The notes under the pieces were generated by a model that ran no database searches, was not told the origin of the DNA, and worked only from the letters and a program-made list of their open reading frames with translations. A DNA stretch of 64,000 nt, taken from assembly GCF_006345805.1 (NCBI RefSeq), contig NC_043010.1:63426001-63490000 (forward strand). Reading direction: 5' to 3'. The translations under genes and the position numbers were made by a program. The stretch's first letter is position 1. The number at the start of each line of letters is the position of its first letter. This stretch comes from Octopus sinensis. Its lineage: Eukaryota. This document shows, piece by piece, positions 12,627 through 58,290 of the stretch.

Positions 12627-12677
<51 letters not shown>

Positions 12678-12888
12678 ATAGGTTTACGTGTGTGTGTTTG
12701 TCCCCCCAACATCGCTTGACAACTGATGGTGGTGTGTTTACGTCCCCATAACTTAGTGGTTCAGCAAAAGAGACTGATAGAATAAGTACTAGGCTTCCAG
12801 AGAATAAGTCGTGGGGTCGATTTGCTCAACTAAAGGTGGTGCTCCAGCATGGCCGCAGTGAAATGACTGAAACAAGTAAAAGAGAGTA

Positions 12889-13105
12889 CAAGGGGGTGCT
12901 GAAAAGTTCCTGGTTTTAAAGGTTTCATGAAAGGCCAGGTTGGAAGCCCGACCTCTTGAGTTCTTTTACAGGGCTTAGAAAAACTGAAGGACCGCTACAA
13001 TAAGTGTGTGAACCTGAGAGGAGAATATGTTAAATAAAATCATAATTAACTGATCCTCCTGTATTTTCTTTTACCCAAAGCCAGGAACTTTTCAGCACCA
13101 CCTTG
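12889..13105 (+). mobile_element. Internally deleted mariner (MITE); second copy ~37947-38146 (-)
   Basis: TIRs CAAGGGGGTGCTGAAAAGTTCCTGG / CCAGGAACTTTTCAGCACCACCTTG; internal QGLEKLKDRYNKCVNLRGEYVK* matches a mariner C-terminus. Confidence 0.85.
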
Positions 13106-13232: not shown

Positions 13233-13642
13233 AGGCGCAGGAGTGGCTGTGTGGTTAGTAGCTTGCTAACCAACCACATGGTTCCGGGTTCAGTCCCACT
13301 GCGTGGCATCTTGGGCAAGTGTCTTCTGCTATAGCCCCGGGCCGACCAATGCCTTGTGAGTGGATTTGGTTGACGGAAACTGAAAGAAGCCTTTCGTATA
13401 TATGTATATATATATGTGTGTGTGTGTCTTTGTGTGTCTGTGGTTGTCCCCCTAGCATTGCTTGACAACCGATGCTAGTGTGTTTACGTCCCCGTCACTT
13501 AGCGGTTCGGCAAAAGAGACCGATAGAATAAGTACTGGGCTTACAAAGAATAAGTCTCAGGGTCGATTTACTCGACTAAAGGCGGTGCTCCAGCATGGCC
13601 GCAGTCAAATGACTGAAACAAGTAAAAGAGTAAAGAGTAAGA
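13233..13642 (+). mobile_element. tRNA-derived SINE group A (well-preserved copy, internal TA/TG microsatellite)
   Basis: Head with A-box TGGCTGTGTGG and B-box GGTTCAGTCCC; tail ggcggtgctccagcatggccgcagtcaaatgactgaaacaag(taaaagag)n. Copies at ~569-950, 2342-2645, 6579-6730, 10000-10378, 11885-12028, 12443-12886, 18281-18625, 40703-40915, 49190-49590, 49673-50055, 50745-51100, 57909-58290, 63575-64000 (+) and 7225-7612, 15265-16065, 38155-38505, 40925-41115 (-). Confidence 0.85.
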
Positions 13643-16941: not shown

Positions 16942-19099
16942 GTTGTTTTGCTTAGGCATAGCAATTCTAGTAACCGTGGTTTAGAACCCAATGTATTGAA
17001 TAGGCTTCAGATCAAAGCCTCAGTCAAGTTAAGAGCAATAATAATGGCCAAGGAACAAGAAGTTAAGTCCAGAAGTTCATGAGAAAATTTCTTATTGCTT
17101 TGTCATTTTGGTTTCTGATATTATTTTTATCGTTTGTTTTTTACTTGTTGCATTCATTAGGCTCTGGCCATGCCGAGGGTACCAACTTGAAGAATCTGTC
17201 GAAAGAATCGAACCCTGTACTATTTTTTTTTTAAAGCCTGGTACTTATTGTATTAGTTTTTGGGGCTGAACTGATGAGGTACAGGGACGTAAACGTACCA
17301 ACACCGGGTGGGGGGGCACAAACACATACATGCACAATGGACTTCCACTCTGTCTTCATCTATGAATTCCATTCTTGAGGCTTTAGTAGAAAACATTTGC
17401 CAAAGAGAGTTCGAGTAGAATAGAACCTGAAACCACATGGTTACAAAGAGAGTTCTCTACCCACACGGCCCAGCTAGCACTTAGACACACATATACATCT
17501 GTTTATTATGATCTCTACCTCTGTGTGTTTATATGTATGTTTGTGTTTGTATACCTGTGTGTGTGTGTATATTTATGTGTGTCTGTGTTTCAACACTCGG
17601 CGGCCAATGTTGGTTCACATCTCTAACTCAGCGGTTCGGCTAGGATAGAGTAATAGAATATGTTCTACAATATGTACTGGCGTCGATTTCATGACGGTGT
17701 CCCAGTCCTACAATTGTCCTATGACAGAAACAAGCTCGAAAAAAAAAAAGTTTATATTATTATAGAAACTAGATTTTCGTTTCGGACTAGACTTAGCATT
17801 ACAGAAAGTCAACTATTTTTTGCATATTGTGTATTGTCAATGAATGACACAGACGACCGTCAATGTATGGTTCACAGAGCAAATGACAGCTGACGATGTC
17901 GTCTGCTCATCGACCTTCTGGAAAATGTGTCAAAAAGCAGCTGAAAAATAGTTACTAAAAAAAAAATTCTAGAAGCTGTTTCAATAAAGATTCCGTATTG
18001 AACCGAATGCCATTTAATGATAGATATATATACGTTTTCTGATTTTGCCCTGAGGAAATATGTAAGCTTTTGACACGTGTTCGTGTGAGGGTAAAAGGTG
18101 AAAAATGTCGATTCTGTTGGAATACAGAACAGGTGGAAGGGAGATAACTGCTGTCGTCTCGAAAGAGATTTTTCAGACGTTATGTGTGTATATACGTGTG
18201 TATGTATATATTCTATGTAAATGCACTGGTGTAATATGTATGTGCATGTATTTATATATGTATATATGTGTGTGTATGTAGACGCAGGAGTGGCTGTGTG
18301 GTAAGTAGCTTGCTTACCAACCACCTGGTTCCGGGTTCAGTCCCATTGCGTGGCACCTTGGGCAAGTATCTTTTACTATAGCCTTGAGCCAACCAAAGCT
18401 TTGTGAGTGGATTTGGCAGACGGAAACTGAAAGAAGCCCACCGCATATATATATATGTGTGTGTGTATGTGTGCCTGTATTTGTCCCCCCAACATCACTT
18501 GAGAAACCGATAGTGGTTCGGCAAAAAAGTGACTGATAGAATAAGTACTAGGCTTACAAAGAATAAGCCCTGGGGTCAATTTGCTCGACTAAAAGGCGGT
18601 GCCCCAAGTAAAAGAATAAAAGAATATATGTGTATGTTTAATTATATGCACACACACACGTACATACATACATAGATAGGTAGATAGACATAATTATGCA
18701 TACAAAATAAATGTCATAACAATAATCTGTTTACTAGCAGATCATTGTGATGATACTCTGATATATATATACATACATACATATGTATGCATGTGTACAT
18801 ATATCACAGTATCAAGCATTTATATACACACGTTTGTGTGTATAGCAATCATCCAGTCCATGCTGTAAAGTGGTTGGTGTTAGGAAGAGCATCCGGCCAG
18901 TAAAGCCCTCATGCAGTCCTCTGGCTAGCCAGCTCCCGTCCAACCCACACCTGCATGGAAAATGAACATTAAATGATGATGATGATAATGATGTGTCTGT
19001 GTGTGTGGTGAATCTGCATGGAAACAGGATTGAGTTCTTTGATCAAGTCAATTATCTGCCCCTGAATTAATATGTTAGTGGCTGAACATTCCACTAACA

Positions 19100-19482
19100 T
19101 CATCATCATCATTGTTTAACGTCCGCTTTCCATGTTAGCATGGGTTGGATGGTTTGACTGGGGTCTGGGAAGCCAGGGGGCTGCACCAGGCTCCAGTATG
19201 ATCTGGCAAAGTTTCTACAGCTGGATGCCCTTCCTAACACCAACCATTCTGTGAGTGTAGTGGGTGCTTTTTACGTTCCACCGGCACAGGTGCCAGGCGA
19301 GGCGGGCAACGGCCATGATCGGTTGGTGCTTTTTATCGGCACAGAAGCCAGTCGAGGTGGCGCTGGCAACGGCCATGTTCGGATGGTTCTTTTACGTGCC
19401 ACCGGCACTGGTGTCACAACTATAATTTCCATTGATTTTTGATCGATTTCGATTTCACTTGCCTCAACAGGTTTTCGCAAGC
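19100..19482 (-). mobile_element. RTE-X-like 3'UTR fragment with (GAT)n tail
   Basis: Same family as 8600-8815. Other copies at ~1550-1690, 1940-2072, 3620-3880, 10960-11188, 37270-37500, 57225-57330, 59055-59215 (all -) and 18850-18990, 41470-41772 (+). Confidence 0.75.
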
Positions 19483-21195: not shown

Positions 21196-23246
21196 ATGTA
21201 TCCGATACAACCAGTTTTTCCGATGAACTTCAACACCCCTTCTGGCTTCTATGGTCAGCCGATCTACAACCCTGGCTGCCATTTAAAAGTCCCTGATAAG
21301 TCACAGATTATGAACATCCTCGACAAGAACAACGACTTGTTGTGGAAAGACTTCAGTCCAGCAAACGGTGCCAACGATGCCACCAGCGGAAGCCACGGTG
21401 TGGACAACAACAGTGGAAATAACAACATGTGCATGAATAACAGTGGTGCCGCTTCAACGTGCAGCAGCCCTGGCAACAATGCTGGTGGTGGTGGTGGTGG
21501 TGGTGGTGGTGGTGGCGGCGCTGGTGGTGGAGCTGGTGGTGGTGGTGGTGGTGGTGGTGGTAATAGTGGTGGTGATGGTAGTAGTGGTGGCAGCACCAAC
21601 GACAACAACCAACAAGATGGAGACAGCATGCGAAACAGTCAAGGTGGAAACGAGAAATCTTTCTTTTGTACATTTTGTAAGAAAGGATTCACCAACCAGT
21701 TCTTCCTGAAGAACCACGAACTCACACACACAGGCGTTCGACCATTTGACTGCAATTCTTGTGACAAAGCCTTTACGCAGAAAATCAATCTCAAAAACCA
21801 TTTAAGGACCCATTCAGGGGAGAAACCTTTTCAGTGTTCCCTTTGTCCAAAGGCCTTCAGTCAACAAGGTAATCTCAAACTCCATCTCAGAACTCATACG
21901 GGAGAGAAACCATATTCTTGTGAAGTCTGCGGTAAAAGTTTCTCCCAAAAAATCAATTTGACTTACCACAACCGTATTCACACTGGAGACCTTCTCTATT
22001 GTCAGTTCTGCAAGAAACCATTTTCTAACGAGTTCTTCCTCAAAATACACGAACGTATACATACGGGCGAGAAACCTTTTCATTGCCATTTCTGCAACAA
22101 GTGTTTCTCACAAGAGACAAACTTGAAGAATCATCTGCGAACTCACACTGGCGAACGACCATTTTCCTGTAGTGTTTGTTCGAAGGCTTTTAGCCAGAGA
22201 GGTAATCTAAAGCTCCATCTTAGAACTCATACAGGTGAGAAACCATTTGCCTGTGATGTATGCGGTAAAGCCTTTTCCCAGAAAGTAAATCTAAGCGACC
22301 ACAAAAGGCTTCACACTGGAGACCTGTTCTATTGCAGTTACTGCAAGAAACCGTTTTGCAATCAATTTTTTCTGAAGATTCATGAGCGGACGCACACGGG
22401 CGAACTTTACAAATGTACATTTTGTCCGAAAGATTTCACCCTTTTGATCAACCTGAAGAACCACCTGAGGACCCATACGGGGGAGAAACCATTCCATTGC
22501 AGTATGTGTTCAAAGTCTTTTAGTCAGCAAGGAAATCTTAAGTTACACATGAGGACTCACACGGGGGAAAAACCGTTCAAGTGTGACCTTTGTGACAAGT
22601 GCTTCTCCCAAAAAACTAATCTTGAAAATCACCAGCGTGTCCACACTGGACAATTGTTTAAATGTGACTATTGCACCAAAGAGTTTACTTTGCAAATTAG
22701 CCTGAAAAACCACATCCGGGTCCACACGGGAGAGAAACCTTTCCATTGCAGCTATTGTAACAAGCTCTTCTCACAGCGAACCGAATGGCGTAACCACGAG
22801 CGGACCCACACGGGGGAAAAACCATTCCAATGTCAGATTTGTTCGAAGGCTTTTTCTCAAGCTGGAAACTTGAAGTTACACATGAGGACACACACAGGCG
22901 AGAAGCCGTTCAAGTGCGACACATGCAACAAGTCGTTCTCGCAGCGAGCCAACCTGAACAACCACAAAAGGACTCGAACGGGCTGTGAGCTCTTCACCAA
23001 GCAGCCGCCGTTGGCCTCCACTGCTTCGTCATCCGCTTCTCATGGCTGCATGATGTACCCCAAGGACTCCAACCTCTCGCCTCCGATGCCAGGTTCGGAC
23101 CCTCTCCCTGTGATGGGGTCGTCCATGATGATGCCCTCCGAAGACAAGAATGATGGTGACAACCATCAGCATCACGAAAAGAGCGCTTTGTCCTCAGCTT
23201 CTCAGACATCCACGTATAACTGTGATACGAGTGCGTCGAAACCTCA

Positions 23247-23299
<53 letters not shown>

Positions 23300-23652
23300 A
23301 ACACCAACAACAACAGCAAGCTCATCAGTCTGCCATGTTATCATCAAATTCCAACAAGCACAACATGAAAACCAACAAGCACCATCAAGAACATTTACCA
23401 CCAAATTCCCACATGGGACGGTCAGAGCAACACCTTCATCCAAACCAACAAGATACCCAGGGTGGAATGCGACTGCACCCTTCGAACCTGTCTCGGTTTA
23501 ATTCCGCTGCATATCTGCATGAGATGTCGCAGAACTGGGAGACCAACTACCTCTGGCCCAGAGGGTACCCTATGCCCACACTGCTTGGCTCCAGCTGGCC
23601 AAACATGCCTACATCTTACTCTAGCGGCAAACATGGTAAACAGAACTCGTGA
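21196..23652 (+). CDS. Multi-C2H2 zinc-finger protein (ZNF-A), 818 aa, 16 fingers, single coding exon
   Basis: Uninterrupted ORF with 16 C-x2-C-x12-H-x3-H repeats and TGEKP linkers; the last finger has H->R. Poly-Gly lies N-terminal and poly-Gln C-terminal. An in-frame TGA at 21166 supports the ATG at 21196. A likely acceptor (ttaacttacag) ends at 21136. Confidence 0.95.
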
Positions 23653-24994: not shown

Positions 24995-27900
24995 CACACA
25001 CACACACACAGATATATATATATATGTATGTATATTGCTTCCTGCATGCATATGCCTTTTGCATGTATTTGGATTGTAAGTTAAAGCTCTCTAGTAATAA
25101 TAGTTTTAATCGTGTTGACTTTGTCCATTAAGTATAACATCTGCACCCAGAAGATATTTGTGTCTGAGGAGGTAATTTGTACCTGTGTGTGTGTGCATGT
25201 CCGTGCACATGGGACGAGAGGGGAGAGGGGCGTGCACTGCTTCCTTGTAATGAGAGAAGAATGGGTCTATTATTCCTTGTACATAATGTTGTAGACTTCC
25301 AACCCACTTTTCTCTCCCCAAACTGCTTATTTATATATACTCCTACCACCACAATGCCATGCCTCAGCCTTCTTCCCCACTGGCCCTCAGTTATGCCATC
25401 TGTAAATCTTATCAGCTGAGCTTTACAATACTTTATTGGTAAATACTGTGCACATGGTGCACATTGATGCATCATTGCTGCACCATGGCGAGTGCACTTG
25501 CAGTCAGTTTGTCATCTTGGTGTAATTAGTTGTTATTTATTTTTTTTATGTGTTGTTGTTGTCAGTCTTGTGGTTAACCTTACCCTGCCCCCTGCCCAGC
25601 CTGACTTGTAGCCCCACACTTTACGATCCACACCTGGCAGTGACTTAATAAGGTGGATGTCTTTACCTGCCACAGTGTCTTAGATACCATAAATGTGAAA
25701 TTGGTGAACAAATTAAAATGCATCACAGGTTTTCGAGTTCTAATATCCAAAGTTAATTAAAATACCTGTGTTGTCGCCTCCTGTTTAATTTTTTTTCATC
25801 AGAATTATTCAATAAGAAAATGATTTTTGTCACCTTAAGGTTGTAGTTTTAATTAATAAAAAATTTTTAGGCTGACTTCATTAAACCTGTTCATACCTAC
25901 TTCAAATACTTTGCTGTGTCTCCTTGGGTACTACACTTAATTTCACATGTTTTACTTTACATAACCTCAGCTCACCTTAGCAAGTGATGGTACCAGGTTA
26001 CAAGGTTTTGTAACCTGGTACCATCACTTGTACCAGGTTACAAGGTTCTGTGTTCAATCCCAGGGTGCTGTGTCTTGGGAAAGTGTTCTGCTGTGGTTAC
26101 CCAATTTTTTGTGAGTAATATTTAGGAGATAAAAAACTATCTGCAAGTCCATGTGTGTGCGAAGGTACTTAGGGAGTTGCACTTGTGGTTATGGGTCAAT
26201 GGTTTCAATTCCTGGACTGGGCATTGTGTTCGATTCATGAACAAAATATTTAATTTCTTGTTGTTCCAGTCTACTCAGCTGTAGATTTGCACCAACAATA
26301 GCTGGGAGATTAATCCTTCGACAGACTGGTGTCTCATTCAGTGGGGTAATGTTGGAATCTCAGTCCCCGACATGCCATGGAAACCGGGTGGGGGTAGGGG
26401 GGTGTGGCTCAGTGGTTTAGGTTTTGGACTTGTGATCATATGATTGTGGTTTTATTTCCTGTACTGTGTGATGTGTCATACCCTTGAACAAAACACTTCA
26501 TTTCACATTGCCCCCATACACTCAGCTGGCGAAAATGAGAAATCTTGTGACGGACCATCCTCCCATTCACGAATGGAGTATTTCCGCCACAAAACCAAGG
26601 AAACCGACACCATGAGTCTATGGAGCTATCCATGGAAACTGTGTCAGCCTTATGAATCCTAAGGCTCAGGAAAATGAGAATAATTAAATAAACGCATGTG
26701 TTTGTGTATGTATCTGCATCTGTGTGGATGTTTACATCGTGTAGTCCCTTGGAAAGAAAATGACTGTGTTATGGGTTGGTGTTGTCTGATGTTATTTCCT
26801 TGTCACAATGTCTGGGAGTGAAAGTTACCCTTGCTGGGAATGCAAGCAAGGCTTAGCAGCTGAGAGGGCAGCTGGCTGTAAAACAGTGTTTCAACAATAT
26901 GTATTCACCTAACCCATGCTAGCTAGCATGAAGGATGTAAATGAAAGAATATATATGTGTGCGTGTGCTTGTTTAAACAATGCACAAACAGGTATATATA
27001 TGTACACAGTATATATATATATATATATATCATCATCATCGTTTAACGTCCACTTTCTATGCTGGCATGGGTTGGACAAATATATATACACATATATATG
27101 TGTGTGTGTATCTATATATAATGCATATATACATATTTCTTTATTGCCCACACGGGGGTTAAACATAGGGGACAAACAAGGACAGACAAAGAGAGTAAGT
27201 TAATTACATCAACTCCAGTGCTTAACATGTACTTATTTAATTGACCCCTAAAGGATGAAAGGCAAAGCCGACTTCGGCAGAATTTGAACTCAGAACCTAA
27301 CGGCAGACAAAATATCACTAAGCATTTCACCCGGCATACTAATGACTCTGCCAGCTTGCCACCCTATAATACATATATATTAGTAAATGCATGTGCACAT
27401 AAACACACAGATGCTAATTGGGTAAGATCAGACATATACACACATCAACATATTCACATAGAGACACAGGTCACAGGTTTAATAGCTGGTCCCTTTATTT
27501 TCACTTAACCACTTTCTGTGCCTTTTAGCAGGGTCAGGCCTCGCATGGCCACAGGAGGCTGATAAAAGGTCCAAGGGTGCTATCCTTCTTTCTTTCTCTC
27601 TTTCTCACTCTGGCTAAGCCATCTAAATATAAACACACTCATTTAACCTTGTGGTGTGTGTGTGTGCATAAATCACTTCCAGTTTATATAAATTCCCCTA
27701 TAAATAAACTATTTATTTCCTGTCCTGCAAACTCTGCTGACTGCGGCTTTTGTCACTTGTGACACTGGAAACAAGGACACTGACCTTCTTTTCCCTTTCA
27801 GAGTGTCTATGTATGTCACCAGCTATGGCCTCTCTGTCTGTGTGCGTGTGTGCACATGCTCTTGTGTCTATAATTAGCATTATGCGTAGCTTTGTGGATC

Positions 27901-31256: not shown

Positions 31257-31737
31257 GTATGTATGTGTTATATATATATATGTAGATGTGTGTTATATAT
31301 ATATATATGTGTGTATATATATATATATGTATGTGTATATATATATATAATATATGTATGTGTGTGTATGGTGCCAGGATCACTCCCTGGTTTATTCTTC
31401 CCCTCAAAAGAGCCAAAGAAATAAATTTTGTGTCAATCCCGTCTTTTTTTGTTATTATTATTATTATTATTATTAGTATGACATGTGACTGTCAGTCTGT
31501 CATGTGATGGACATGAAATTATATTTGCTATTCTGTCTCGCTGTGTATTTTGTCAATGACAATCTGGTTTGTTGTCATTATGTCAATATTCATTTTGTCC
31601 TCCACCATCGTCTTTCTCTATCATATCAATGTCCACATTGTCTCCTTTTCTGTCTATGTCCTATCTTACATCAATATGCATTTTGACTGTCTCCATAACA
31701 ACCATTATAATATATATATATATATATATATAGAAGG

Positions 31738-31788
31738 AGCTTCTACAGGACTAGAACTGTTTCATTCAAGAGAAATCTTCAGGAAGCT
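31738..31788 (-). ncRNA. Type I hammerhead ribozyme motif (mirror copy of 37027-37077)
   Basis: Exact reverse complement of the 37027-37077 motif, at the outer end of the left palindrome arm. Confidence 0.7.
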
Positions 31789-33572
31789 AGTTAACAAGAA
31801 TTGTATTGGCATTTATACATTTAGGCAGGTTTAAAGGGTGTGGTTTGGGGGGACTTTTTGGGGGTAGGCATAGCGCAAAATATCATACTTGGGGGAGTGG
31901 TCAAGGAGTCAGTGTTAAATTAGATAGAAGAAATAAATAAAAAATAAAAAATAAAAAATAAAAAAATCTATATATAAAAAAAAGGGGAATAGAGTTTTAG
32001 GTAAATAAGGAGATTCTCACTTATACCTATGCACACATGTATACATACATACACACACATACAAACATATATACACATACATACAACATACAACACATAT
32101 ATATACATATATATATACACTTACACATACATATACATATCTACACATACACATATATGTATACATACACACACTCACATGCATACACGTATACACACAT
32201 GTATATATACACACACGACCACACATACATATACGCACAGAAAAATATATATACACATACACACACACTCACATACACGCATACACACACATATCCACAC
32301 ACACATGCACACACAGCACACTAGTCCCTATATACACATATATACACATACACACACATATACACACACATACATACATATACATACATGTATATATATA
32401 TATACATATATACATATGTGTACCTATGCATACCTACACATACACACATATATATACACATACAAATACAGACCCATTCCCTAATTTTAATTTTATTATC
32501 TTCGTTTATTACTTTTGTTATCTTGGCCGCTTGGTCACAAACATCTTGGCTATGACAGCCAGTCCATTATCTGTCTACTGGAAAACAAGCACTCATTCAC
32601 TCACGCACACTCTTTAGCACGTACACTCACTCATTCGTACACTCATACACATACACGCACACACGCGTTATATTCATACATACATACATCTACATACATT
32701 CACGTATATACACATACGTACGCGTACCTACAGGTTCATGTCTACACTCTTAGAAGGCTAGTATATAATATACACCAATAAATATAAATACACACACATA
32801 CATATACACCTACATACAAATACATACATGTATATAATATATATATATATATATATTCACATATATATACACATATATATATATACATATACACACACAT
32901 ACGCATACACACACATATACATATATACACACATACACATACATACATATACACACATACACATACATACGTATACATACATACATACATCCATACATAC
33001 ATACATTATACACACACAACTCACATACATACATATATATACGCGCATATTATATATATAATATATATATATATATATATCATACACACACATACATATA
33101 CAAATATACGCACACACATACATACATACTCATATACTCATACACGCACATACACATGTACATGCGTACCACACACACACACACGCGCGCATCCATATAT
33201 ACACATAAGTACACACATGCGTAAAAGTATACATATATCTATGCTTACACATACACACACACACACGCGCCTCCTTATATTCATACTTACATGCATACTC
33301 AAAAAATAAGTAAATAGTAAAATATATATACGCGCAGTTATTCATACATGCATACTCAAAAAATAAATATTAAGTATATGTACGTGCAGTTACCTATTAT
33401 ATAGACGGATACATACATATAAACTTACACACACATATATATATATATACGATGATCCGGTTCTGGACTGAGACTGAGGGGTTCGAATGTCCTGTCCATG
33501 TTATTGTATCGTCTTCTATATACACGTTCTTGTCCATGTTGTATTTTCTACATACCTTAATATATATAATAT

Positions 33573-33608
<36 letters not shown>

Positions 33609-33732
33609 ATATACATACATATATACACCTAATATATACATACATATATACACATATATATATATACATACATATATACACATATATATACACATACATA
33701 CATACATACATATATATATACAACACACACAT

Positions 33733-33783
<51 letters not shown>

Positions 33784-33943
33784 CTTACACACATGTACAT
33801 ATAATACACACATAGAGATACTCTACGTACCTACATATACATAACACACGAGCGTACGCGTATATGTACATATACACATACACATACACACGCATATATA
33901 TACATACATACATACACATACACACATGTATACACACACACAC

Positions 33944-33980
<37 letters not shown>

Positions 33981-34347
33981 CACACACAACATATACCTAT
34001 ATACATATATATACACATATAAATAACACATACAATTTATCTACACTCACATACCTGCACATACACAAACTCTACATACCACATATACATCGACATACTC
34101 GCGTACACTCAATATAGATACACACACACACACACACACACATACATATAATCTATATATAACATACATACATACACATATACATACATGTACATATACA
34201 CATACACACACATATATATACACACACATACATGTATCAACAATTGAGGGTAAACTTTACCCTCAATTGTTGATATATGTATGTGTGTGTATATATATGT
34301 GTGTGTATGTGTATATGTACATGTATGTATATGTGTATGTATGTATG

Positions 34348-34421
<74 letters not shown>

Positions 34422-34659
34422 TGTATGTGTGTGTATATGTGTATTATGTATGTATATATTTATATATATGTATATGTATATGTATATGTATGTGTGTGTG
34501 TATATGTATATATGTGTATATATATGAGTGTACGCGAGTATGTCGATGTATATGTAGGTATGTAGAGTTATGTGTATGTGCAGGTATGTGAGTGTAGATA
34601 CAAATTGTAGATGTGTATATATATGTATGTGTATATATACATGTATATAGGTATATGTA

Positions 34660-34708
<49 letters not shown>

Positions 34709-34808
34709 TATATATATATGTATATGCGAGTATGTAGAGATATAAGTATGTGCATGTGTATATATATGTGTGTATATATATGTATGGTATGTGTATGTGG
34801 TATGTATG

Positions 34809-34842
<34 letters not shown>

Positions 34843-35324
34843 ATGTATGCATATACGTATGTATGCATGTATGTATATGTGTATGTATATTATGTATGTA
34901 AGTGTGTGTATATATGTAAATGTAAGTGTGTGTGCTTGTATGAGAATGTATGTATGTTTGCACACATGTATATATGTGTGTGTATGTGTATATGTATATA
35001 TATATATGTATATATATATGTATATATATATATATATATGTATAATATGTGTATCTATATATACGTGTATATGTGTGTGTGTGTATACATGTGTGTATGA
35101 GTATGTATGTATGTATATATATGCGTGTGTATGTGTATGTGTATATGTACATATACGCGTACGCTCGTGTGTTTATGTATATGTAGGTACGTAGAGTTAT
35201 CTATGTGTGTATTTATATGTACATGTATGTAAGTATGTATATATATATATATATGTGTGTATGTGTGTGTGTGTATATATATATGTATGTATGTATGTAT
35301 GTGTATATATATGTGTATATATGT

Positions 35325-35364
<40 letters not shown>

Positions 35365-35965
35365 AAGTTTATATGTATGTATCCGTCTATATAATAGGTA
35401 ACTGCACGTACATATACTTAATATTTTTTGAGTATGCATGTATGAATAACTGCGCGTATATATATTTTACTATTTACTTATTTTTGAGTATGCATGTGTA
35501 AGTATGAATATAAGGAGGCGCGTGTGTGTGTGTGTATGTGTAAGCATAGATATTATGTATACTTTTACGCATGTGTGTACTTATGTGTATATATGGATGC
35601 GCGCGGTGTGTGTGTGTGTGTATGGGTACGCATGTACATGTGTATGTGCGTGTATGAGTATATGAGTATGTATGTTGTGTGTGGTATATTTGTATATGTA
35701 TGTATGTATATGTATGTGTGTGTAGAATATATATATAATATATATAATATATATATATATATGCGCGTATATATATGTATGTATGTGGGGTGTGTATGTG
35801 ATAATTGTATGTATGTATGGATGTATGGATGTATGTATGTATGTATACGTATGTAGTGTATGTGTGTATATGTATGTATGTGTATGTGTGTATATATATG
35901 TATATGTGTGTGTATGCGTATGTGTGTGTATATGTATATATATATATATGTGTATATATATGTGA

Positions 35966-35997
<32 letters not shown>

Positions 35998-37026
35998 ATT
36001 TGTATGTAGGTGTATATGTATGTGTGTGTATTTATATTTATTGGTGTATATATATAGACTAGCCTTCTAAGAGTGTAGACATGAACCTGTAGGTACGCGT
36101 ACGTATGTGTATATACGTGAATGTATGTAGATGTATGTATGTATGAATATAACGCGTGCGTGCGTGTATGTGTATGAGTGTACGAATGAGTGAGTGTACG
36201 TGCTAAAGAGTGTGCGTGAGTGAATGAGTGCTTGTTTTCCAGTAGACAGATAAATGGACTGGCTGTCATAGCCAAGATGTTTGTGACCAAGCGGCCAAAG
36301 ATAACAAAAGTAATAAACGAAGATAATAAAATTAAAATTAGGGAATGGGTCTGTATTTGTATGTGTATATATGTGTGTATGTGTAGGTATGCATAGGTAC
36401 ATATGTATATATGTATATATATATATACATTATGTATATGTATGTATGTGTGTGTGTATATGTGTGTGTATGTGTTATATGTGTATATAGGGACTAGTGT
36501 GCTGTGTGTGCATGTGTGTGTGGATATGTGTGTGTATGCGTGTATGTGAGTGTGTGTGTATGGTATATATATTTTTCTGTGCGTATATGTATGTGTGGTC
36601 GTGTGTGTATATATACATGTGTGTATACGTGTATGCATGTGAGTGTGTGTATGTATACATATATGTGTATGTGTAGATATGTATATGTATGTGTAAGTGT
36701 ATATATATGTATATATGTGTGTGTATGTATGTGTGTATGTATATGTATATATGTTTGTATGTGTGTGTATGTATGTACATGTGTGCATAGGTATAAGTGA
36801 GAATCTCCTTATTTACCTAAAACTCTATCCCCCTTTTTTTATATATAGATTTTTTTTATTTTTTATTTTTTTATTTTTTATTTATTCTTCTATCTAATTT
36901 AACACTGACTCCTTGACCACTCCCCCAAGTATGATATTTTGCGCTATGCCTACCCCCAAAAAGTCCCCCACCAACACCCCTTTAACCTGCCTAAATGTAT
37001 AAATGCCAATACAATTCTTGTTAACT

Positions 37027-37077
37027 AGCTTCCTGAAGATTTCTCTTGAATGAAACAGTTCTAGTCCTGTAGAAGCT
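37027..37077 (+). ncRNA. Type I hammerhead ribozyme motif (complete core)
   Basis: Stem I AGCTTC 37027-32 / GAAGCT 37072-77; CTGAAGA 37033-39; stem II T-TTC(tctt)GAA-T; GAAA 37052-55; stem III ACAG/CTGT with 8-nt loop; GUA triplet 37069-71. Confidence 0.75.
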
Positions 37078-37167
37078 CCTTCTATATAATAAATTAATTT
37101 TACTCTGCTATGTATTGAGTACCTTATTTACTGTGGTTAACCCCGAATCAACCGGGACCTACATATA

Positions 37168-37208
<41 letters not shown>

Positions 37209-37241
37209 GTGTGTGTATATGTGTGTGTGTGTGTGTATATA

Positions 37242-37274
<33 letters not shown>

Positions 37275-38526
37275 ATAATATATCATCATCATCATCATCG
37301 TTTAACGTCCGTTCTCCATGCTAGCACGGGTTGGACGGTTCGACCGGGGATCTGGGAAGCCAGGAGGCTGCACCAGGCTCCTGTCTGATCTGGCAATGTT
37401 TCTACAGCTGGGTGCCCTTCCTAACGCCAACCACTCCAGGAGTGTAGTGGGTGCTTTTTACGTGCCACCGGCACGGAAGCCATTCGAGGCGGCACTGGCA
37501 TATATAAACACCTTTTATCAATTCAAAATGAACAATTAAATTACACCATCTAGATAATTACATATAATAAAAATATATATATTATATTGTGTGAAATTTG
37601 ATTTAATATTTCTAAATTGTATTTTTTTCCTTGTAAGTTTGGATTTTATTCCCTCAAATAATAATAGAATTATTACATCATGTGAAAAAAAAAACCGTTT
37701 TCATCAGGTGAATATATGCAAAAAAACACTCCACGAATCCAAGAATGTGTCATTTCATGGTCCATAGTGAATTCCATCTGTTGTTACTTGCTTTTATTTA
37801 TATATATATATATATTGGCCTGCTCACTTAGTCAGTGGGGTTGCATCATTTGAAGGCTAAAACAATGCGAAGCGCAATGTGACCAGTGATGTGTAGAAAC
37901 ATCTGATACATGGAGGCAGATGCTACACAATAATGATGATATATATTTCCTGGCTTTTAGTAAAGGAAAATACAGGAGAATCAGATAATTACGATTTTAT
38001 TCAACATATTCTTCTCTCAAATTCACGCCCTTATTGCAGTGGTCCTTCAGTTTTCTAAGCCCTGTGAAAGAACTTGGAAGGTTGGGCCTCCAATCAGGCC
38101 CTTTGTGATACCCTTAAAGCCAGGAACTTTTCAGCACCCCCTCATGTATATATTTTGTCTTTTACTTGTTTCAGTCGTTAGAGTGTGGCCATGCTGGGGC
38201 ATTGTACTTGAATTTTAAGTTGAGCGAATCGACCCCAGTACTTATTCTATCAGTCTCTTTTGCTGAACTGCTAAGTTATGGGGACGTAAACACACCAACG
38301 CCAGTTGTCAAGTGATGGGGGTGGGTAAAGACACACACACACACATATACGATGGGCTTCTTTCAGTTTCCATCTACCAAATCTACTCACAAGGTTTTGG
38401 TCAGCCCAAGGCTATAGTAAAAGACACTTGCCTAAAGTGCCACTCAGTGGGACTGAAACCAGAACCATGGAGCTGGGATGCAAACTTCCTGCCACACAGC
38501 CATGCCTATGTATGTGTGTGTATATA

Positions 38527-40304: not shown

Positions 40305-41919
40305 CTTCTTGACTTATAATCTATGCAACATACAACCATCTGCACTTATGGCCAAAAAAAATAAGGAAATAAAAAAGTGAATATATATAAATCGATTTTT
40401 GGACGTTGGCCAGCAATACATAGGATGACAATGGCAGCATCTGGCAATGCAGGCCTCCCTCAGACCCAGGCATCCACTGCCTGCCACTGTCTCTCACTCA
40501 GTCGCTTTCAAGCATCAGTTGTGTTTGAATGGAAAAATAGTATTGTAAAATATATATCTGACATACGACCAGATTGACTTACGACTGGTCAACTGGAAAG
40601 GAATTCGGTTGTAAGTCAAAGAGAAGGTGTATATGTATGTATGAGTATAAACACACACACACATATATATATATACACATACACACATTATATGTACATA
40701 GGTATAGGAGTGGCTGTGTGGTAAGTAGCTTGCTTACTAACCACATAGCTCCGGGTTCAGTCCTACTGCGTGGTACCTCGGACAAGTGTCTTCTACTATA
40801 GCCTTGGGCCGACCAAAACCTTGTGAGTGGATTTGGTAGACAGAAACTGAAAGTAGCCCATCGTATATATATATATCCAGCATGGCTGCAGTCAAATGAC
40901 TGAAACAAATAAAAGAATATGCATATTCTTTTATTTGTGGAGCACCGCCTTTATAGTCGAGCAGATTAACCCCAGGACGTATTCTTTGTAAGCCTAGTAC
41001 TTATTCCATGAGTCTCTTTTGCCGAACCGCTAAGTTACGGGGACGTAAATACACCACCATCGGTTGTCAAGCGATGTTGGGGGGACAAACACAGACACAC
41101 AAACATATACACACACATAAATACTTATATATATATGAGAGGTTCTCCCATGGCAACTTTCACAGTAATCTGTGTATCCACTTTTAAATAGGGATAAATA
41201 TTTGTTTCAAATTTTGGCACATGGCCAGCAATTTTGGGGGATGGAATAAGTTGATTACACAACCCCTGTACTTAATTGCTACTAATTTTATCAACTCCAA
41301 AAGGACAAAAGGCAAAGTAGACCTCGGCAGAATTTGAACTTGGAATGTAAAGATGGAAGAAATGTCGCTTGGGCTTTTTGCCTGGCATGCTAACGAGTCT
41401 CGGAACTTGATTAAGTAGGGATAAATATTACCTTTTGGTATTGATACTGCTTCTGTCACTAATAATTATTCCATAGCGAGGTCGTTGCCAGTGCCGCTGG
41501 ACTGGCTCCTGTGCAGGTGGCATGTAAAAAGCACCATATTGAGCGTAGCCGTTGCCAGTACCGCCTGACTGGCCCTCATGCCGGTGGCACGTAAAAAAGC
41601 ACCCACTACACTCTTGGAGTGGATGGCATTAGGAAGGGCATCCAGCTGTAGAAACTCTGCCAGATCAGAATGGAGTCTGGTGCAGCCATCTGGTTTGCCA
41701 GACCTCAGTCAGACCATCCAACCCATGCTAGCATGGAAAGCGAACGTTAAACGATGATGATGATGATGATGAATTCATATAATACCTTAATAGCAAACTT
41801 TAATTATTCATTTACTAGTCAATTATCAAATTAATCATAATTTCTGCAAATCTTGTAAATTACTGTAAGCAAAATTTTATATCTCTTTTGGCAGGATGAG
41901 AAACCACGTAAGTGAACCA

Positions 41920-42315
41920 TCCAATCATGGCTGTTGCCAGTGCCGCCCCGACTGGCCTCCGTGCCGGTGGCACGTAAAAAGCACCATCCGATCGTGACCG
42001 TTGCCAGCCTCGCCTGGCCCCCGTGCCGGTGGCACGTAAAATGCACCATCCGATCGTGACCGTTGCCAGCCTCGCATGGCCCCCGTGCCGGTGGCACGTA
42101 AAATGCACCATCCGACCGTGGCCATTTCCCAGCTCCGTCTGGCACGTAAAAGCACCCACTACACTCACGGAGTGGTTGGCGTTAGGAAGGGCATCCTGCC
42201 GTAGAAACACTGCCAGATCAGACTGGGCCTGGTGCAGCCTTCTGGCTTCCCAGACCCCAGTTGAACCGTCCAACCCATGCTAGCTTGGAAAGCAGACACT
42301 AAATGATGATGATGA
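41920..42315 (+). mobile_element. RTE-X-like 3'UTR fragment with ~60-bp internal tandem units
   Basis: Unit gttgccagcctcgcctggcccccgtgccggtggcacgtaaaa(a/t)gcaccatccgatcgtgacc occurs about three times, then the family body and a gatgatgat tail. Confidence 0.8.
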
Positions 42316-43489
42316 TTGTTACTATCCATTACTATTGCATCCGAAGGAACAACACCTCAATGGCCATGTTATTACTCTTTATTATTATTGAGTCCTAAAG
42401 TGACAAGAGATCATCTCAACATGCTGAGACCCCCTTCAGTCACGACACAGACCTTGGGATTGCACTTAGAAAGTTACCCCCCCAGGCACAAGTCCGGGCA
42501 AGGTTGTTTATGGAAGACCAGCAGTCGCCCATGCATACCAGCCTCCCCTCTCCACACCACTGATGTTATCCAAGGGAAAGGCAAAGGCCGATACAGCTTG
42601 GCACCAGTGATGTCACAACTCCTCTCTACAGCTGAGTGAACTGGAGCAACGTGAAATAAAGTGTCTTGCTCAAGAACACAACACACAGCCTGGTCTGGGA
42701 TTTGAGCTCACAACCTCATGATCGTAAGCTCGATGCTCTAACCACTGAGCCATGCGCCTTCAGCATGCTGTATATACAATTAATTGATTTAATTGCCTAA
42801 CATCATCAATTAAAGTAGGTATCATAATTTGAAAGGCACTTTAGCCTTTGTAGTCTTATGCTCCATACAGATCCCTGTCATAAAATTGAAAATGAAAGAC
42901 AAATTTGACCTTGGCAGCATTTGAACTCTGAACATAAAGCTAAAGGAAATACTGCTGGGCATTTTTTTCAGTATGGTAAGAATTCTACCAGCTCAGTGCC
43001 TTATTTAGAACAAACCCCCCCCCCCAAAAAAAAGGGGGGGGGGAGCATTGCATTAAAATTTAAAGAAACCAAATTTGAAAATTAAACAAAAATTGTAATT
43101 TAAATTTTCAGCTAAACAATATTGAACATCCAAGCAGACTGAGAAATAGAAGATCTCAAAGTTCAGATTAGTTAACATGGATTAAGAATACCACTTTTTC
43201 CATGCAAAAAACTCATTGGATCTAAAATCTTTGTCTATGCAATCACCAGAGATGCCTGGTTGAGTAGAAGGGCACTCACTGCAGAGAGCATGGAAGCTGC
43301 AGAGGCAAAGCTGACCGTTGGTGCAATAACCTCATGCATGGGCATTGCTGTCACAAGTGGACAGCCAACATCTTCCTCCTCACATATACATAAATATGTA
43401 AATGTGTTGATTCACCAGAAGTGACAAATGACAGGACTCAACACGTGTAGAGTTTCCTTCAATACATTAATACTGAAATGCTCCTGTAT

Positions 43490-45266: not shown

Positions 45267-46486
45267 TTGGGTCATCCCATAAATAATGCAGTTTTTCAAA
45301 TGCATGAACTAAAAGTTGGAGAGGGATGGGATAAACTACCTGCAGCAACTTGCGATAAAAGTAGGTAGTAATTTTACCTTGTTCTTATTCTTAGTGCAAA
45401 TTTTGAAGAGTGCAGTTCGATTTTAAGTTATTTTTTCAAAGCTATAATGAAAGTGGCAAAGGAGCATATTCGGCATATTTTGCTTTATGAGTTCAATAAA
45501 GGCAACAATGCAACGGAATATTAATGCAGTATATGGGGATCAGACAATAAGTGTAAGCCAGTGTCAATGGTGGTTCCAGAAATTACAGCCTAGAAGATGA
45601 GCCTCGTCCTTGAAGATCTGTAGAGCTTGACGAGGACATCCTGCAAACCTAAGTGGAACAAAATCCCATTGTAATGGTTGAGGAACTAGCAGAGAAGCTT
45701 AGATTTGGTCATTCAACCATTCATCAACACCTGTGTGCCATCGGAAAAGTCAGCAAATTGGGTCAATGGGTTCCTCACAAACTTTCCGAGTTTAATCCTG
45801 CACAGAGAGTGAATGTGTGCCCTTCCCTGCTGTCATGTCTCACAAATGAACCCTTTTTAGATCGAATAGTAACTGGTGGCAAGAAATGGGTTCTCTATAA
45901 AAATGTCAAGTGCTGAAGACTGTGGGCAGGGAAAGGAGAAACACCAGCACCCCAGGCTAAAGAAGGTTTTCACCCACATAAAGTGTTATCTGTTTGGTGG
46001 GGTATGAAAGATTTAGTCCACTTTGTACTTTTAAACCCAAACCAAATGATAACAAAGGAGATCAACTTGAGTAGCTTAAGTCAGCACCAGAAGAAAAACA
46101 ACGGTGTTTGGTTTCAAGACGAAAGGTGTTCTTCCATTACATACAGTAAGGATGGCATTCCAAAAACTGGAGCAGTTTCAATGGGAAATGATGCCCCACC
46201 AACCATATTTCCTGGACATTGCTCCATCTGATTACCATTTAATATGCCTTCTTCAAAATTATTTGGGCAGAAAAAAATATGAATGTTGTAGACAAGATCA
46301 GAACAGTACTGGAGAAATATTTTTTATCACAGGTAAGTGAATTTTGGAAGAGGGACCTTGTAAGTCTATCAGATGGATAAAAGAGCATTGTAGAAAATGG
46401 AGGAGAGTATATTTTAGATTTAAAAAGAATTTATCTTAATTTTGAAAAATAAAGTATATAAAAACATTATTTATGGGATGACCCAA
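45267..46486 (+). mobile_element. Near full-length defective mariner (DD34D-type) transposon
   Basis: TA-flanked TIRs TTGGGTCATCCCATAAATAATG / CATTATTTATGGGATGACCCAA. ATG at 45447 (MKVAKEHIRHILLYEF); motifs WVPHKL, DRIVTGGKKW and PYFLDIAPSDYHL; multiple stops and frameshifts. Confidence 0.92.
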
Positions 46487-49185: not shown

Positions 49186-49359
49186 ACAAGGCGTAGGAGC
49201 AGCTGTGTGGTTAAGGAGCTTGCTTACCAACCACAACCACATGGTTCCTGGTTCAGTCCCACTGTGTGGCACCTTGGGCAAGTGTCTTCTAATATAACCT
49301 TGGGCCGACCAAAGCCTTATGAGTGGATTTGGTAGACAGAAACTGAAAGAAGCCCATCG

Positions 49360-49390
<31 letters not shown>

Positions 49391-51224
49391 GTGTGTGTGT
49401 GTTTGTCCTCCCAATGTCACTTGACAACCGATGCTAGTGTGTTTATGTTCTCGTAACTTAGCGGTTCGGCAAAAGTGACCGACAGAATAAGTACTAGGCT
49501 TACAAAGAATAAGTCCTGGGGTCGATTTGCTTGACTAAAGGTGGTGCTCCAGCATGGCTGCACTCAAATGACTAAAGCAAGTAAAAGAAAGAATAAGGCA
49601 TTTTTCCAACATTCTAATGATTCTGCTAATTCACCTAATAATAATAATAATAATAATTCTTTGTACTGTAGGGACAGGTGTGGCTGTGTGGTAAGAAGTT
49701 TTCTTTCTAACAATATGGTTCTGGGTTCAGTCCCACTGTGTGGCACCTTAGGCAGTTGTCTGCTATTATAGCCTCAGGCCAACCAAAGCTTTGTGAGTGG
49801 ATTTGGTGGATGGAAACTGAAAGAAGCCCAACATATATATATATATATATATGAGTATGTCTTTGTTTCTCACCACTGCTTGACAACTGGTGCTGGTGTG
49901 TTGACATCCCTGTAATTTAGCAGTTCAGCAACAGAGATTGATAGAATAAGTACCAGGCTTAAAAAAAAGGGTCGATTCATTCAACTAAAAATTCTTCAAG
50001 GCAGTGCCCAAGCATGGCCGTGCCCTCATGACTGAAACAAGTAGAAGATAAAAGATATAGATACAAGGCCGGAAATTTTGGGCAAGAAGCTGTTTGATTT
50101 CATCAACCTCCACTGCTTGACCGGTCCTCATTTTATTGACCCCCAAAAGGACGAAAGGCAAATAATAATAATAAAAATAATCAACAATGATTGAGCATGG
50201 AGATGATGAGTGAAATGTGTGGTCAGATGCTAGCAAGAATGATGGTGATGATGATGAGGATGATGGAACGATGTGATTAAAGAAGTAGTTTTTTTGAAGA
50301 GGAAGAGGGGATGGCACATGAATAATAATAAAAAAATACAAAAACAAACAATATATTTTGGCTTGTGTATTGCTTCTAGTTTGGCAGAGAGTCAAAGGTT
50401 AATAACAAAAATTCGGGGGGAGCGGGGGTCGAGCAGTTACATGGGAATGGAGGAGAGGACCAGAGGATTTGGTACAGAAAAAGTCTGCTTTTGCTGTAGA
50501 CATGGATCATTTCCTTTCAAAAAAAAAAAAGTTGTTTCCAAGGTTGGTTCAATTCCCAGATGAGTAGATACTAAGAGAATATGGTGCGATCCCCAGATAT
50601 ACACACATATATACATACATACATATATATATATATACATATATATATATACATATCAGAGATCAGTTTTTACTGAGTTTAGTTCAATTCCCAAATGAGT
50701 TAATGTGTGGTGCAGGTGGGAAGATGTGTGTATGTATGTATACATATGTAAGAAGTTGCTTTCCAACCACATGGTTCCAGGTTCAGTCCTACTGTGTGGC
50801 ACCTTGGGCAAGTGTCTTCTGCTATAGCCTTGGGCTGATCAAAGTCTTGTGGGTGAATCTGGTAGATGGAAACTGAAAGAAGCCTGTTATGTATATATAT
50901 ATATGTGTATATATTTACATGTGTGTGTGTGTCTTTGTCTCCCCCACCATTGCTTGATAACCGATGCTGGTGTGTTTATGTCCCTGTAACTTAGCAGTTT
51001 GGCAAAAGAGACCAACAGTACTTGGCTTACAAAGAATAAGTTCTGGGGTTGATTTCTTCGATGGAGCATGGCCACACTCAGATGACAGAAACAAGTGAAA
51101 GATGTATGTAAATATACGAACAGACCACGAACCAGGAATTTGAGATGTTTCTTAAATTCCTGAGTGAGAAGAAGAAGAATTGGTACATGCAGGGAACAAA
51201 ATTCCCAAGGACAGCTGAGAAAAG

Positions 51225-57908: not shown

Positions 57909-58290
57909 GGCACAGGAGTGGCTGTGTGGTAAGTAGCTTGATTACCAACCACATGGTTCTGGGTTCATTCCCACTGCGTGGCACCTTGGGCAAGTAAGTG
58001 TCTTCTACTATAGCCTCGGGCCGACCAAAGCCTTGTGAGTGGATTTGGTAGACGGAAACTGAATGAAGCCCGTCGTATATATGTATATATACACACATAT
58101 GTTGTCCCCCCCAACATCGCTTGACAACGGATGCTGGTGTGTTTACGTCCCTGTAACTTTAGCGGTTTGGCAAAAGAGACCAAATAAGTACTAGGCTTCC
58201 AAAGAATAAGTCCTGGGGTAAATTTGCTCGACTAAAAGCGGTGCTCCAGCATGGCCGGAGTTAAATGACTGAAACAAGTAAAAGAGTAAT
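57909..58290 (+). mobile_element. SINE group A copy abutting the CR1-like fragment
   Basis: Full head, body and tail match 13233-13642. Confidence 0.85.

What the first reader, a model, noticed from the sequence alone, without database searches (positions are those of the whole stretch)
31731..37084. ~5.35-kb palindrome with a 1-nt spacer between the two ZNF genes
Seen: the arms are reverse complements around a perfect 41-nt non-microsatellite hairpin centred at 34255. Unique-sequence parts are nearly identical, but there are many small indels in repeats, a ~105-bp block only in the left arm (33451-33557) and a ~300-bp block only in the right (~34717-35040). Established: long spacerless palindromes are unstable in vivo and also arise as fold-back chimeras in long-read or amplified libraries. 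Inference: either a real fold-back or template-switch product (cruciform, dsRNA source) or a misassembly. The scattered indels and odd TGTC-rich sequence at 31470-31700 suggest poor polishing; the arm-specific blocks and the ribozyme-coincident boundary argue for something real.
Basis: partly seen in the sequence, partly recalled or inferred. Interest (0 to 1): 0.7.

Follow-up and report, generated by a model that had tools for sequence, protein, structure and literature searches.

The report
Near-spacerless 5.4-kb palindrome in octopus assembly
A 5.4-kb stretch between two zinc-finger genes of the Octopus sinensis PacBio assembly reads almost the same on both strands around a single central base; the sequence alone cannot show whether it is a very young inverted duplication or an assembly error, and it is of modest interest either way.

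Summary
A perfect 41-nt hairpin (34235-34275) is centred on C34255. Collinear arms run 31725-34254 and 34256-37090, and the flanks are unrelated. The window is Octopus sinensis GCA_006345805.1, CM016872.1:63,426,001-63,490,000, a PacBio plus Hi-C assembly.

With long gaps allowed, the arms are 99.0% identical over 2274 aligned positions. They differ by 60 indel events, 45 of them 1-2 nt, against 22 mismatches. Diverged repeat copies elsewhere in the window show about 10 mismatches per gap. The small arm differences therefore look like long-read consensus error, and they are spread evenly over both arms. The true arms are probably nearly identical.

Each arm also carries private blocks flanked by TA-rich tracts: about 200 nt only in the left arm, 366 nt and about 122 nt only in the right.

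No ribozyme lies at either boundary. No SMRTbell adapter lies at the centre. There are no Ns, no informative target-site duplication and no other copy in the window. No other assembly or read set of this locus could be reached.

Real or artefact stays open. Unrelated flanks and private blocks favour two physical copies (about 0.45). The 1-nt spacer, the error-type differences and an assembly rich in duplicated BUSCO genes favour an artefact (about 0.40). Read mapping would decide.

The parts
31725..34254 (+). Left arm, 2530 nt. It is CA/TA-rich (A 42%, C 22%, G 8%, T 28%). Non-microsatellite islands lie at about 31731-32022, 32455-32775, 33268-33412, 33796-33880 and 34018-34118.
34256..37090 (-). 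Right arm, 2835 nt. It is the reverse complement of the left arm: 2274 aligned positions at 99.03% identity.
34235..34275 (.). Perfect 41-nt central hairpin of complex sequence, with 20-nt arms and the single unpaired base C34255.
34162..34348 (.). 187-nt core that is palindromic without gaps: one mismatched arm pair (G34234 against T34276) besides the unpaired centre C34255. As DNA it folds into a hairpin at -99.3 kcal/mol, z = -21.
33449..33651 (+). Left-arm-only block of about 203 nt. Its complex core, 33451-33557, occurs once in the window and has TA-rich tracts on both sides.
34699..35066 (+). Right-arm-only block of 366-368 nt, bounded by TA-rich tracts and containing complex sequence. 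The left arm has only a (TA)n run at this position.
34391..34524 (+). Second right-arm-only block, about 122 nt of low-complexity CA/TA sequence.
31706..31732 (.). Left outer junction. A (TA)n run of the left flank abuts the arm start, TAGAAGGAGC.
37084..37165 (.). Right outer junction (…GCTCCTTCTATATA|ATAAATTAATT…) followed by about 75 nt of single-copy flank. Beyond it come a TA/TG microsatellite (37163-37276) and a SINE copy (about 37281-37500).

Best explanation
The contig carries two physical copies of one 2.5-2.8-kb CA/TA-rich intergenic segment, joined head to head with one unpaired base. This is a very young inverted duplication, that is, a near-perfect palindrome, lying between the 3' ends of two convergent C2H2 zinc-finger genes of Octopus sinensis.

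Shown: the symmetry, the sharp outer boundaries, the unrelated flanks, and the indel-dominated nature of the small arm differences.

Inferred, formation: during replication or break repair the nascent strand switched to the complementary template at ...GGGTAAA|C|TTTACCC..., copied the segment backwards, and switched back inside self-complementary TA-rich sequence at the outer boundary, giving flank-arm-arm'-flank.

Inferred, arm differences: the true arms are nearly identical. Most 1-2-nt differences are unpolished long-read consensus errors, because short reads cannot be placed uniquely in a two-copy repeat. The large private blocks are slippage deletions between flanking TA-rich tracts, or consensus drop-outs.

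Inferred, consequences: if real, it should extrude hairpins or cruciforms and act as a fragile, fast-changing site. There is no evidence that it encodes anything.
For: 1. The flanks beyond 31725 and 37090 share only interspersed repeats. There are no Ns in the window, so both outer junctions and the centre lie in gap-free sequence with no scaffold join.
2. A template-plus-complement chimeric read would give mirror-image flanks. These flanks are not mirror images.
3. No SMRTbell adapter-like sequence occurs at the centre or anywhere in 31300-37600: best score 23, against a shuffle mean of 27.9.
4. Each arm has private complex sequence, 33451-33557 on the left and 34699-35066 on the right. One folded-back molecule would not give that.
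5. Small errors are balanced between the arms: 32 against 37 in the periodicity test. That fits two equally unpolished copies rather than one well-supported arm plus one arm taken from a single read.
6. The flanking ORFs of 818 and 905 codons are intact, so unique sequence nearby is well polished. The noise is specific to the two-copy arms.
7. Both outer junctions sit in self-complementary TA sequence, which is suited to strand switching.
Against: 1. The spacer is 1 nt. Sequenced human germline fold-back inverted duplications carry spacers of 766-70,466 bp (PMC3907307). Longer arms, higher arm identity and shorter spacers make palindromes more prone to breakage and rearrangement (PMC7999016). 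That such palindromes usually lose their centre quickly is my own knowledge of the field and was not checked here.
2. The centre is pristine while the arms carry three large indels. That order of decay is odd for an ageing real palindrome.
3. About 2% indel differences in complex sequence means poor consensus. Low read support is one possible cause.
4. The source is a PacBio plus Hi-C assembly with 20,491 contigs and 5.2% duplicated BUSCO genes, against 0.5% in O. vulgaris (PMC10700109). It therefore holds more false duplication than its sister assembly.
5. No independent copy of the locus could be examined.
Confidence: 0.45

Rival explanations
1. Assembly artefact. Only one copy of the segment exists, or two copies that are not adjacent. 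A fold-back (template-plus-complement) long read, or a fold-back tip at a contig end, was then joined to neighbouring sequence inside TA-rich low-complexity DNA, by the assembler or by a merging or gap-closing step. On this reading the arms may represent different reads or different haplotypes of one locus.
For: 1. The 1-nt spacer is what a covalent join of the two strands of one duplex gives. [quoted passage not shown]
2. The small differences are error-type and not evolutionary: 8 substitutions to 22 indels, against about 10:1 in controls, p = 2.5e-17.
3. The arm differences (under 1% substitutions plus structural differences in microsatellites) resemble what I would expect between two haplotypes of one heterozygous locus. 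This is my judgement; no heterozygosity figure was checked.
4. The assembly has 5.2% duplicated BUSCO genes and 20,491 contigs.
5. The left outer junction lies exactly in a (TA)n run, where false joins are easiest.
6. The right arm carries more extra bases in small indels, 33 against 18, p = 0.049.
Against: 1. It needs two independent errors: the fold-back and a false join placed exactly at the homologous outer boundary. A simple fold-back read predicts mirror-image flanks, or a palindrome running to the contig end. Here 27-31 kb of unrelated sequence lies on each side, with no Ns.
2. There is no adapter at the centre.
3. The PacBio data sets examined in PMC12870357 showed essentially no fold-back reads. 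CLR libraries were not among them.
4. Both arms are equally noisy, and each holds private complex sequence.
Confidence: 0.4
2. A foldback-type mobile element, or an inserted palindromic DNA molecule. The whole 5.37-kb palindrome is one unit with very long terminal inverted repeats and almost no loop, inserted into TA-rich DNA.
For: The outer boundaries are sharp, with the termini TAGAAGGAGC...GCTCCTTCTA next to TA or TATA. The arms have unique outer ends and become more repeat-like inward, loosely like the repeat-built arms of Drosophila FB elements (from my own knowledge).
Against: The termini and the unique arm islands have no other copy in the 64-kb window. The only possible target-site duplication is ATAT in TA-rich sequence, which is uninformative. 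There is no coding capacity, only low-complexity ORFs. The translated arm pieces have no protein relatives.
Confidence: 0.07
3. A functional hairpin RNA gene, that is, a miRNA or hpRNA precursor or a structured RNA, at the centre or at the boundaries.
For: In E-value mode Rfam matches mir-3149 across the centre (72 bits, E = 2.6e-13) and mir-297 at many places in the arms.
Against: All matches fall below their gathering scores (72 against 100; 58 or less against 90). They are matches of CA/TG microsatellite hairpins, they occur on both strands and dozens of times, and nothing in the window passes a gathering score. No ribozyme lies at the boundaries.
Confidence: 0.03

Closest known systems
Fold-back (template-plus-complement) chimeric long reads and the false inverted duplications they seed in assemblies
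   Same: Two reverse-complementary halves are joined with essentially no spacer. [quoted passage not shown] The small differences between halves look like sequencing error.
   Different: Such reads are symmetric about their own midpoint, so their flanks mirror each other. Here the flanks are unrelated, no adapter is present, both arms are equally noisy, and each has private complex blocks.
Human palindromic AT-rich repeats (PATRR11, PATRR22 and others)
   Same: [quoted passage not shown] They form cruciforms and are prone to breakage (PMC7999016). That they come as size-polymorphic, asymmetric alleles is from my own knowledge.
   Different: PATRRs are about 200-600 bp and more than 90% AT. This one is 5.4 kb, about 70% A+T, and built from CA/TA repeats interrupted by complex islands.
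Germline and somatic fold-back inverted duplications (break, resection, intrastrand annealing)
   Same: An inverted duplication, with short inverted or self-complementary sequence at the junctions.
   Different: The human cases have spacers of 766-70,466 bp, and their arms run to a chromosome end or a translocation (PMC3907307). Here the spacer is 1 nt and the arms stop after 2.5-2.8 kb, which needs a second template switch.
Foldback (FB) transposons
   Same: Long inverted arms that become more repetitive inward, with little or no loop.
   Different: No second copy, no informative target-site duplication and no family could be shown.

Membership tests
Fold-back chimeric-read artefact | Two halves that are reverse complements, with zero or near-zero spacer | tested here: met
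   The spacer is 1 nt and the central hairpin is a perfect 41 nt.
Fold-back chimeric-read artefact | Symmetry continues to the ends of the molecule, so the flanks on the two sides mirror each other | tested here: not met
   Outside 31725 and 37090 only interspersed repeats are shared. The left flank is (TA)n plus T-rich unique sequence. The right flank is 75 nt of unique sequence, a microsatellite and a SINE.
Fold-back chimeric-read artefact | Missed SMRTbell adapter at the fold point (one subtype only) | tested here: not met
Fold-back chimeric-read artefact | Supported by one or very few reads, with arm depth about half that of the flanks | not testable with these tools
   No reads are available. 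Only indirect hints exist: indel-type noise, balanced between the arms.
PATRR-like AT-rich palindrome | Near-perfect palindrome without a spacer | tested here: met
PATRR-like AT-rich palindrome | More than 90% A+T and a few hundred bp long | tested here: not met
   The arms are about 70% A+T and the total length is 5366 nt. The definition is from PMC7999016.
Break-induced fold-back inverted duplication | Single-copy spacer (the fold-back loop) between the arms, about 0.8-70 kb in sequenced human cases | tested here: not met
   The spacer is 1 nt. The range is from PMC3907307.
Break-induced fold-back inverted duplication | Inverted microhomology at the junction | tested here: inconclusive
   AAA/TTT flanks the central C and TATA sits at the outer boundaries. 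Without the ancestral sequence, microhomology cannot be assigned.
Foldback transposon | Multiple copies that share termini | tested here: inconclusive
   The 64-kb window holds no second copy. The rest of the genome could not be searched.
Foldback transposon | Target-site duplication flanking the element | tested here: inconclusive
   At most ATAT, in TA-rich sequence, which is expected by chance.
   No ribozyme family matches at E <= 10 in 31350-32030 or 36790-37560, and no gathering-score match occurs in the window.
miRNA precursor (mir-3149 / mir-297) | Score at or above the Rfam gathering threshold | tested here: not met
   72.1 bits against 100, and 58.2 or less against 90. These are microsatellite hairpins on both strands.

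The most novel reading that the evidence does not exclude
A germline, near-spacerless palindrome of about 5.4 kb persists in Octopus sinensis between two convergent zinc-finger genes. That is roughly ten times longer than the human PATRRs. Its arms would be kept nearly identical by arm-to-arm conversion while TA-tract slippage remodels them. It would be a natural cruciform-forming fragile site. If either gene reads through into it, the transcript would form a 2.5-kb perfect hairpin RNA, a possible substrate for the strong ADAR editing or the small-RNA machinery of cephalopods.
Probability: 0.15. Interest if true: 0.55.

Novelty: new member of a known kind. Interest (0 to 1): 0.3.

Why it matters
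If real, this is an unusually long near-perfect palindrome tolerated in an animal germline. It would be a natural test case for how cephalopod genomes, which are very rich in TA/CA microsatellites, handle cruciform-prone DNA. It would also be a likely hotspot for breakage next to an expanding zinc-finger gene cluster.

If it is an artefact, it marks a 2.5-2.8-kb false inverted duplication in a widely used reference (GCA/GCF_006345805.1). It also shows a cheap diagnostic from sequence alone: the ratio of indels to substitutions between the arms, compared with repeat copies in the same window, tells consensus noise from real divergence.

Either way it touches no gene, and the question can be settled with reads that are already public.

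Tried and rejected
1. Fetching the same locus from another assembly or read set failed.
 - The 818-aa ORF left of the palindrome is not on record as a gene product.
 - Its whole sequence finds only zinc-finger paralogues, at most 59% identical. Its non-zinc-finger parts find nothing.
 - A 1468-aa concatenate of ORF pieces from both junctions, the arm islands, the left-only block and the centre finds nothing at E <= 10.
 - The 905-aa right gene is found only in GCA_006345805.1. It lies 15.6 kb from the palindrome, beyond the 10-kb flank limit.
 - Exact-pattern scans found nothing. The centre 20-mer was run against the metagenome collection. An arm 28-mer was run against the metagenome, prokaryote-genome and viral collections.
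2. Ribozyme or structured RNA at the boundaries: rejected.
3. miRNA-like matches: rejected as microsatellite hairpins below threshold.
4. SMRTbell adapter at the centre: none.
5. Left-only block as a relative of the TGTC-rich left flank: score 53 against a shuffle mean of 45 with sd 5.5, not significant.
6. A larger, older inverted duplication that includes the two zinc-finger genes: rejected. There is no collinear homology outside the arms. The two proteins share their terminal motifs but are old paralogues.
7. One clean arm plus one arm taken from a single noisy read: not supported, since the errors are balanced 32:37.
8. The clean 93-nt centre as proof of short reads crossing it: dropped. 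Clean stretches of 100-150 nt also occur in mid-arm.
9. The assembler and polisher used by Li et al. 2020 could not be established. The paper is not held, and a search for papers naming O. sinensis together with assembler or polisher names listed none that mentions O. sinensis.
Full report
**Source of the window.** The 905-aa ORF at 52710-55427 (minus strand) is recorded with exactly this sequence on a single contig, CM016872.1 of GCA_006345805.1. From the offsets the window is CM016872.1:63,426,001-63,490,000, plus strand. PMC10700109 identifies that accession as the Octopus sinensis assembly of Li et al. 2020. It lists 20,491 contigs and 5.2% duplicated BUSCO genes, against 0.5% for the O. 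vulgaris assembly. The window contains no N. Both large ORFs, 21196-23652 (+) and 52710-55427 (-), are multi-finger C2H2 proteins. They converge on the region that holds the palindrome.

- The longest exact palindrome is 34235-34275, with 20-nt arms around the single unpaired base C34255.
- Without gaps and with at most two mismatches it extends 93 nt on each side. All other palindromes in the window with arms of 18 nt or more are (TA)n runs, apart from a 25-nt hairpin at 26005.
- As single-stranded DNA the 187-nt core folds at -99.3 kcal/mol, z = -21.
- The outer 1.75 kb of the arms aligns at 94.9%, E = 0. Inner anchors keep the arms collinear to the centre.
- With a scoring scheme that allows long gaps, the left arm (31725-34254, 2530 nt) and the right arm (34256-37090, 2835 nt) share 2274 aligned positions at 99.03% identity. 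There are 22 mismatches and 60 indel events: 32 of 1 nt, 13 of 2 nt, 9 of 3-10 nt, 2 of 11-50 nt and 4 above 50 nt.
- The long events form three blocks. One is left-only, about 203 nt (33449-33651); its complex core, 33451-33557, occurs once in the window. One is right-only, 366-368 nt (34699-35066). One is right-only, about 122 nt (34391-34524). All three are bounded by TA-rich tracts.
- Beyond the arms the two halves of the window share only interspersed repeats, so the outer boundary is sharp.

**What the small differences are.** I used diverged interspersed-repeat copies in the same window as an internal control for real evolutionary divergence. Over 150 alignments they show 6177 mismatches to 596 gap openings, about 10:1 in every identity class. 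In the non-microsatellite islands of the arms (1015 aligned nt) there are 8 substitutions and 22 indel events. Seventeen of those are 1 nt and half lie in homopolymers. Fisher p = 2.5e-17.

The small arm differences therefore carry the signature of long-read consensus error and not of divergence. The true arms are at least about 99.2% identical in complex sequence.

The two flanking ORFs of 818 and 905 codons are uninterrupted. Nearby unique sequence is thus well polished, and the noise is specific to the arms.

In a local-periodicity test, the arm with the more regular repeat at each difference was the left one 32 times and the right one 37 times. The errors therefore sit in both arms about equally. 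Small insertions lean slightly to the right arm, 33 against 18, p = 0.049.

**What it is not.**
- Rfam gives no gathering-score match anywhere in the window and no ribozyme at either boundary even at E <= 10.
- The mir-3149 and mir-297 matches are CA/TG microsatellite hairpins below threshold, on both strands.
- ARAGORN finds no tRNA in the window.
- The arm ORFs are translations of low-complexity DNA and have no protein relatives.
- The arm termini and islands have no other copy in the window.
- The only possible target-site duplication is ATAT in TA-rich DNA.
- The T-rich stretch at 31476-31707 is single-copy and not demonstrably noise.

**Real or artefact.** No independent copy of the locus could be reached. 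The argument therefore rests on anatomy.

For two physical copies:
- A template-plus-complement read gives mirror-image flanks or a palindrome running to a contig end. Here 27-31 kb of unrelated, gap-free sequence lies on each side. An artefact thus needs a second error placed exactly at the homologous boundary.
- There is no adapter at the centre.
- Each arm has private complex sequence.
- The noise is balanced between the arms.
- The PacBio data sets examined in PMC12870357 showed almost no fold-back reads, although CLR libraries were not among them.

For an artefact:
- A 1-nt spacer is what a join of the two strands of one duplex gives. Sequenced human fold-back duplications have spacers of 766-70,466 bp (PMC3907307).
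- Longer, more similar arms and a shorter spacer raise the risk of breakage (PMC7999016). Yet here the centre is pristine while the arms carry large indels.
- The error-type differences show poor consensus.
- The arm differences resemble what I would expect between two haplotypes. This is my judgement; no heterozygosity figure was checked.
- The left junction lies in a (TA)n run.
- The assembly is comparatively rich in duplicated genes.

I put a real, very young inverted duplication at about 0.45, an artefact at about 0.40, a foldback-type element at about 0.07, and an RNA gene at about 0.03.

**Most likely mechanism if real (inferred).** A nascent strand switched to the complementary template at ...GGGTAAA|C|TTTACCC..., copied about 2.5 kb backwards, and switched back inside self-complementary TA sequence at the outer boundary. 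Later slippage between TA-rich tracts, or consensus drop-outs, produced the private blocks. Short reads cannot be placed uniquely in the two-copy arms, which left the consensus indels uncorrected. The structure should extrude hairpins or cruciforms and behave as a fragile, fast-changing site. Nothing suggests a coded function.

**Comparison with known kinds.**
- It works like a PATRR-type palindrome, but it fails the defining composition and size: about 70% A+T and 5.4 kb.
- It resembles break-induced fold-back duplications but lacks their spacer.
- It resembles fold-back read artefacts but fails their flank symmetry.
- Membership of the foldback transposons could not be tested across the genome.

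**Verdict.** Its biological reality is undecided. Mapping the public reads to CM016872.1:63.455-63.466 Mb would settle it. Interest is modest.

Noticed in passing
window 25981-26045: A small forward / reverse-complement / forward pattern: gcaagtgatggtaccaggttacaagg-tt-ttgtaacctggtaccatcacttg-taccaggttacaaggttctgtgttcaatccc. The arms are 25 nt and the centre is at 26005.5. It looks like a short templated snap-back insertion next to a tRNA-like 'ggttcaatccc' motif, so small fold-back events or errors also occur elsewhere in this window.
   Followed up: partly
window 21196-23652 (+): An intact 818-aa C2H2 zinc-finger ORF with poly-Gly and poly-Gln tracts. It is not on record as a gene product, and its non-finger parts have no relative in the protein database. 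Its paralogue at 52710-55427 (-) is annotated. This may be an unannotated gene.
   Followed up: partly
window 37281-37500, also about 3673-3894, 19095-19411, 41480-41770, 42020-42321, 59054-59212: A SINE-like repeat of about 210 nt that ends in a (GAT)n tail. It has at least six copies at 77-94% identity. One copy lies 190 nt outside the right boundary of the palindrome.
   Followed up: no
window 13233-13641, 49189-49597, 57909-58289, 572-943, 10004-10373, 12482-12893 and others: An interspersed repeat family of about 400 nt with at least eight copies at 70-85% identity.
   Followed up: no
window 45983-46231 (+): A remnant of a mariner-type transposase: PF01359, partial DDE domain, E = 5e-6.
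   Followed up: no
window 33466-33492: The left-only block contains 'gaggggttcgaatgtcc', which resembles a tRNA T-arm. The block could be a fragment of a tRNA-derived SINE, but ARAGORN finds no tRNA in the window and the block has no other copy there.
   Followed up: partly
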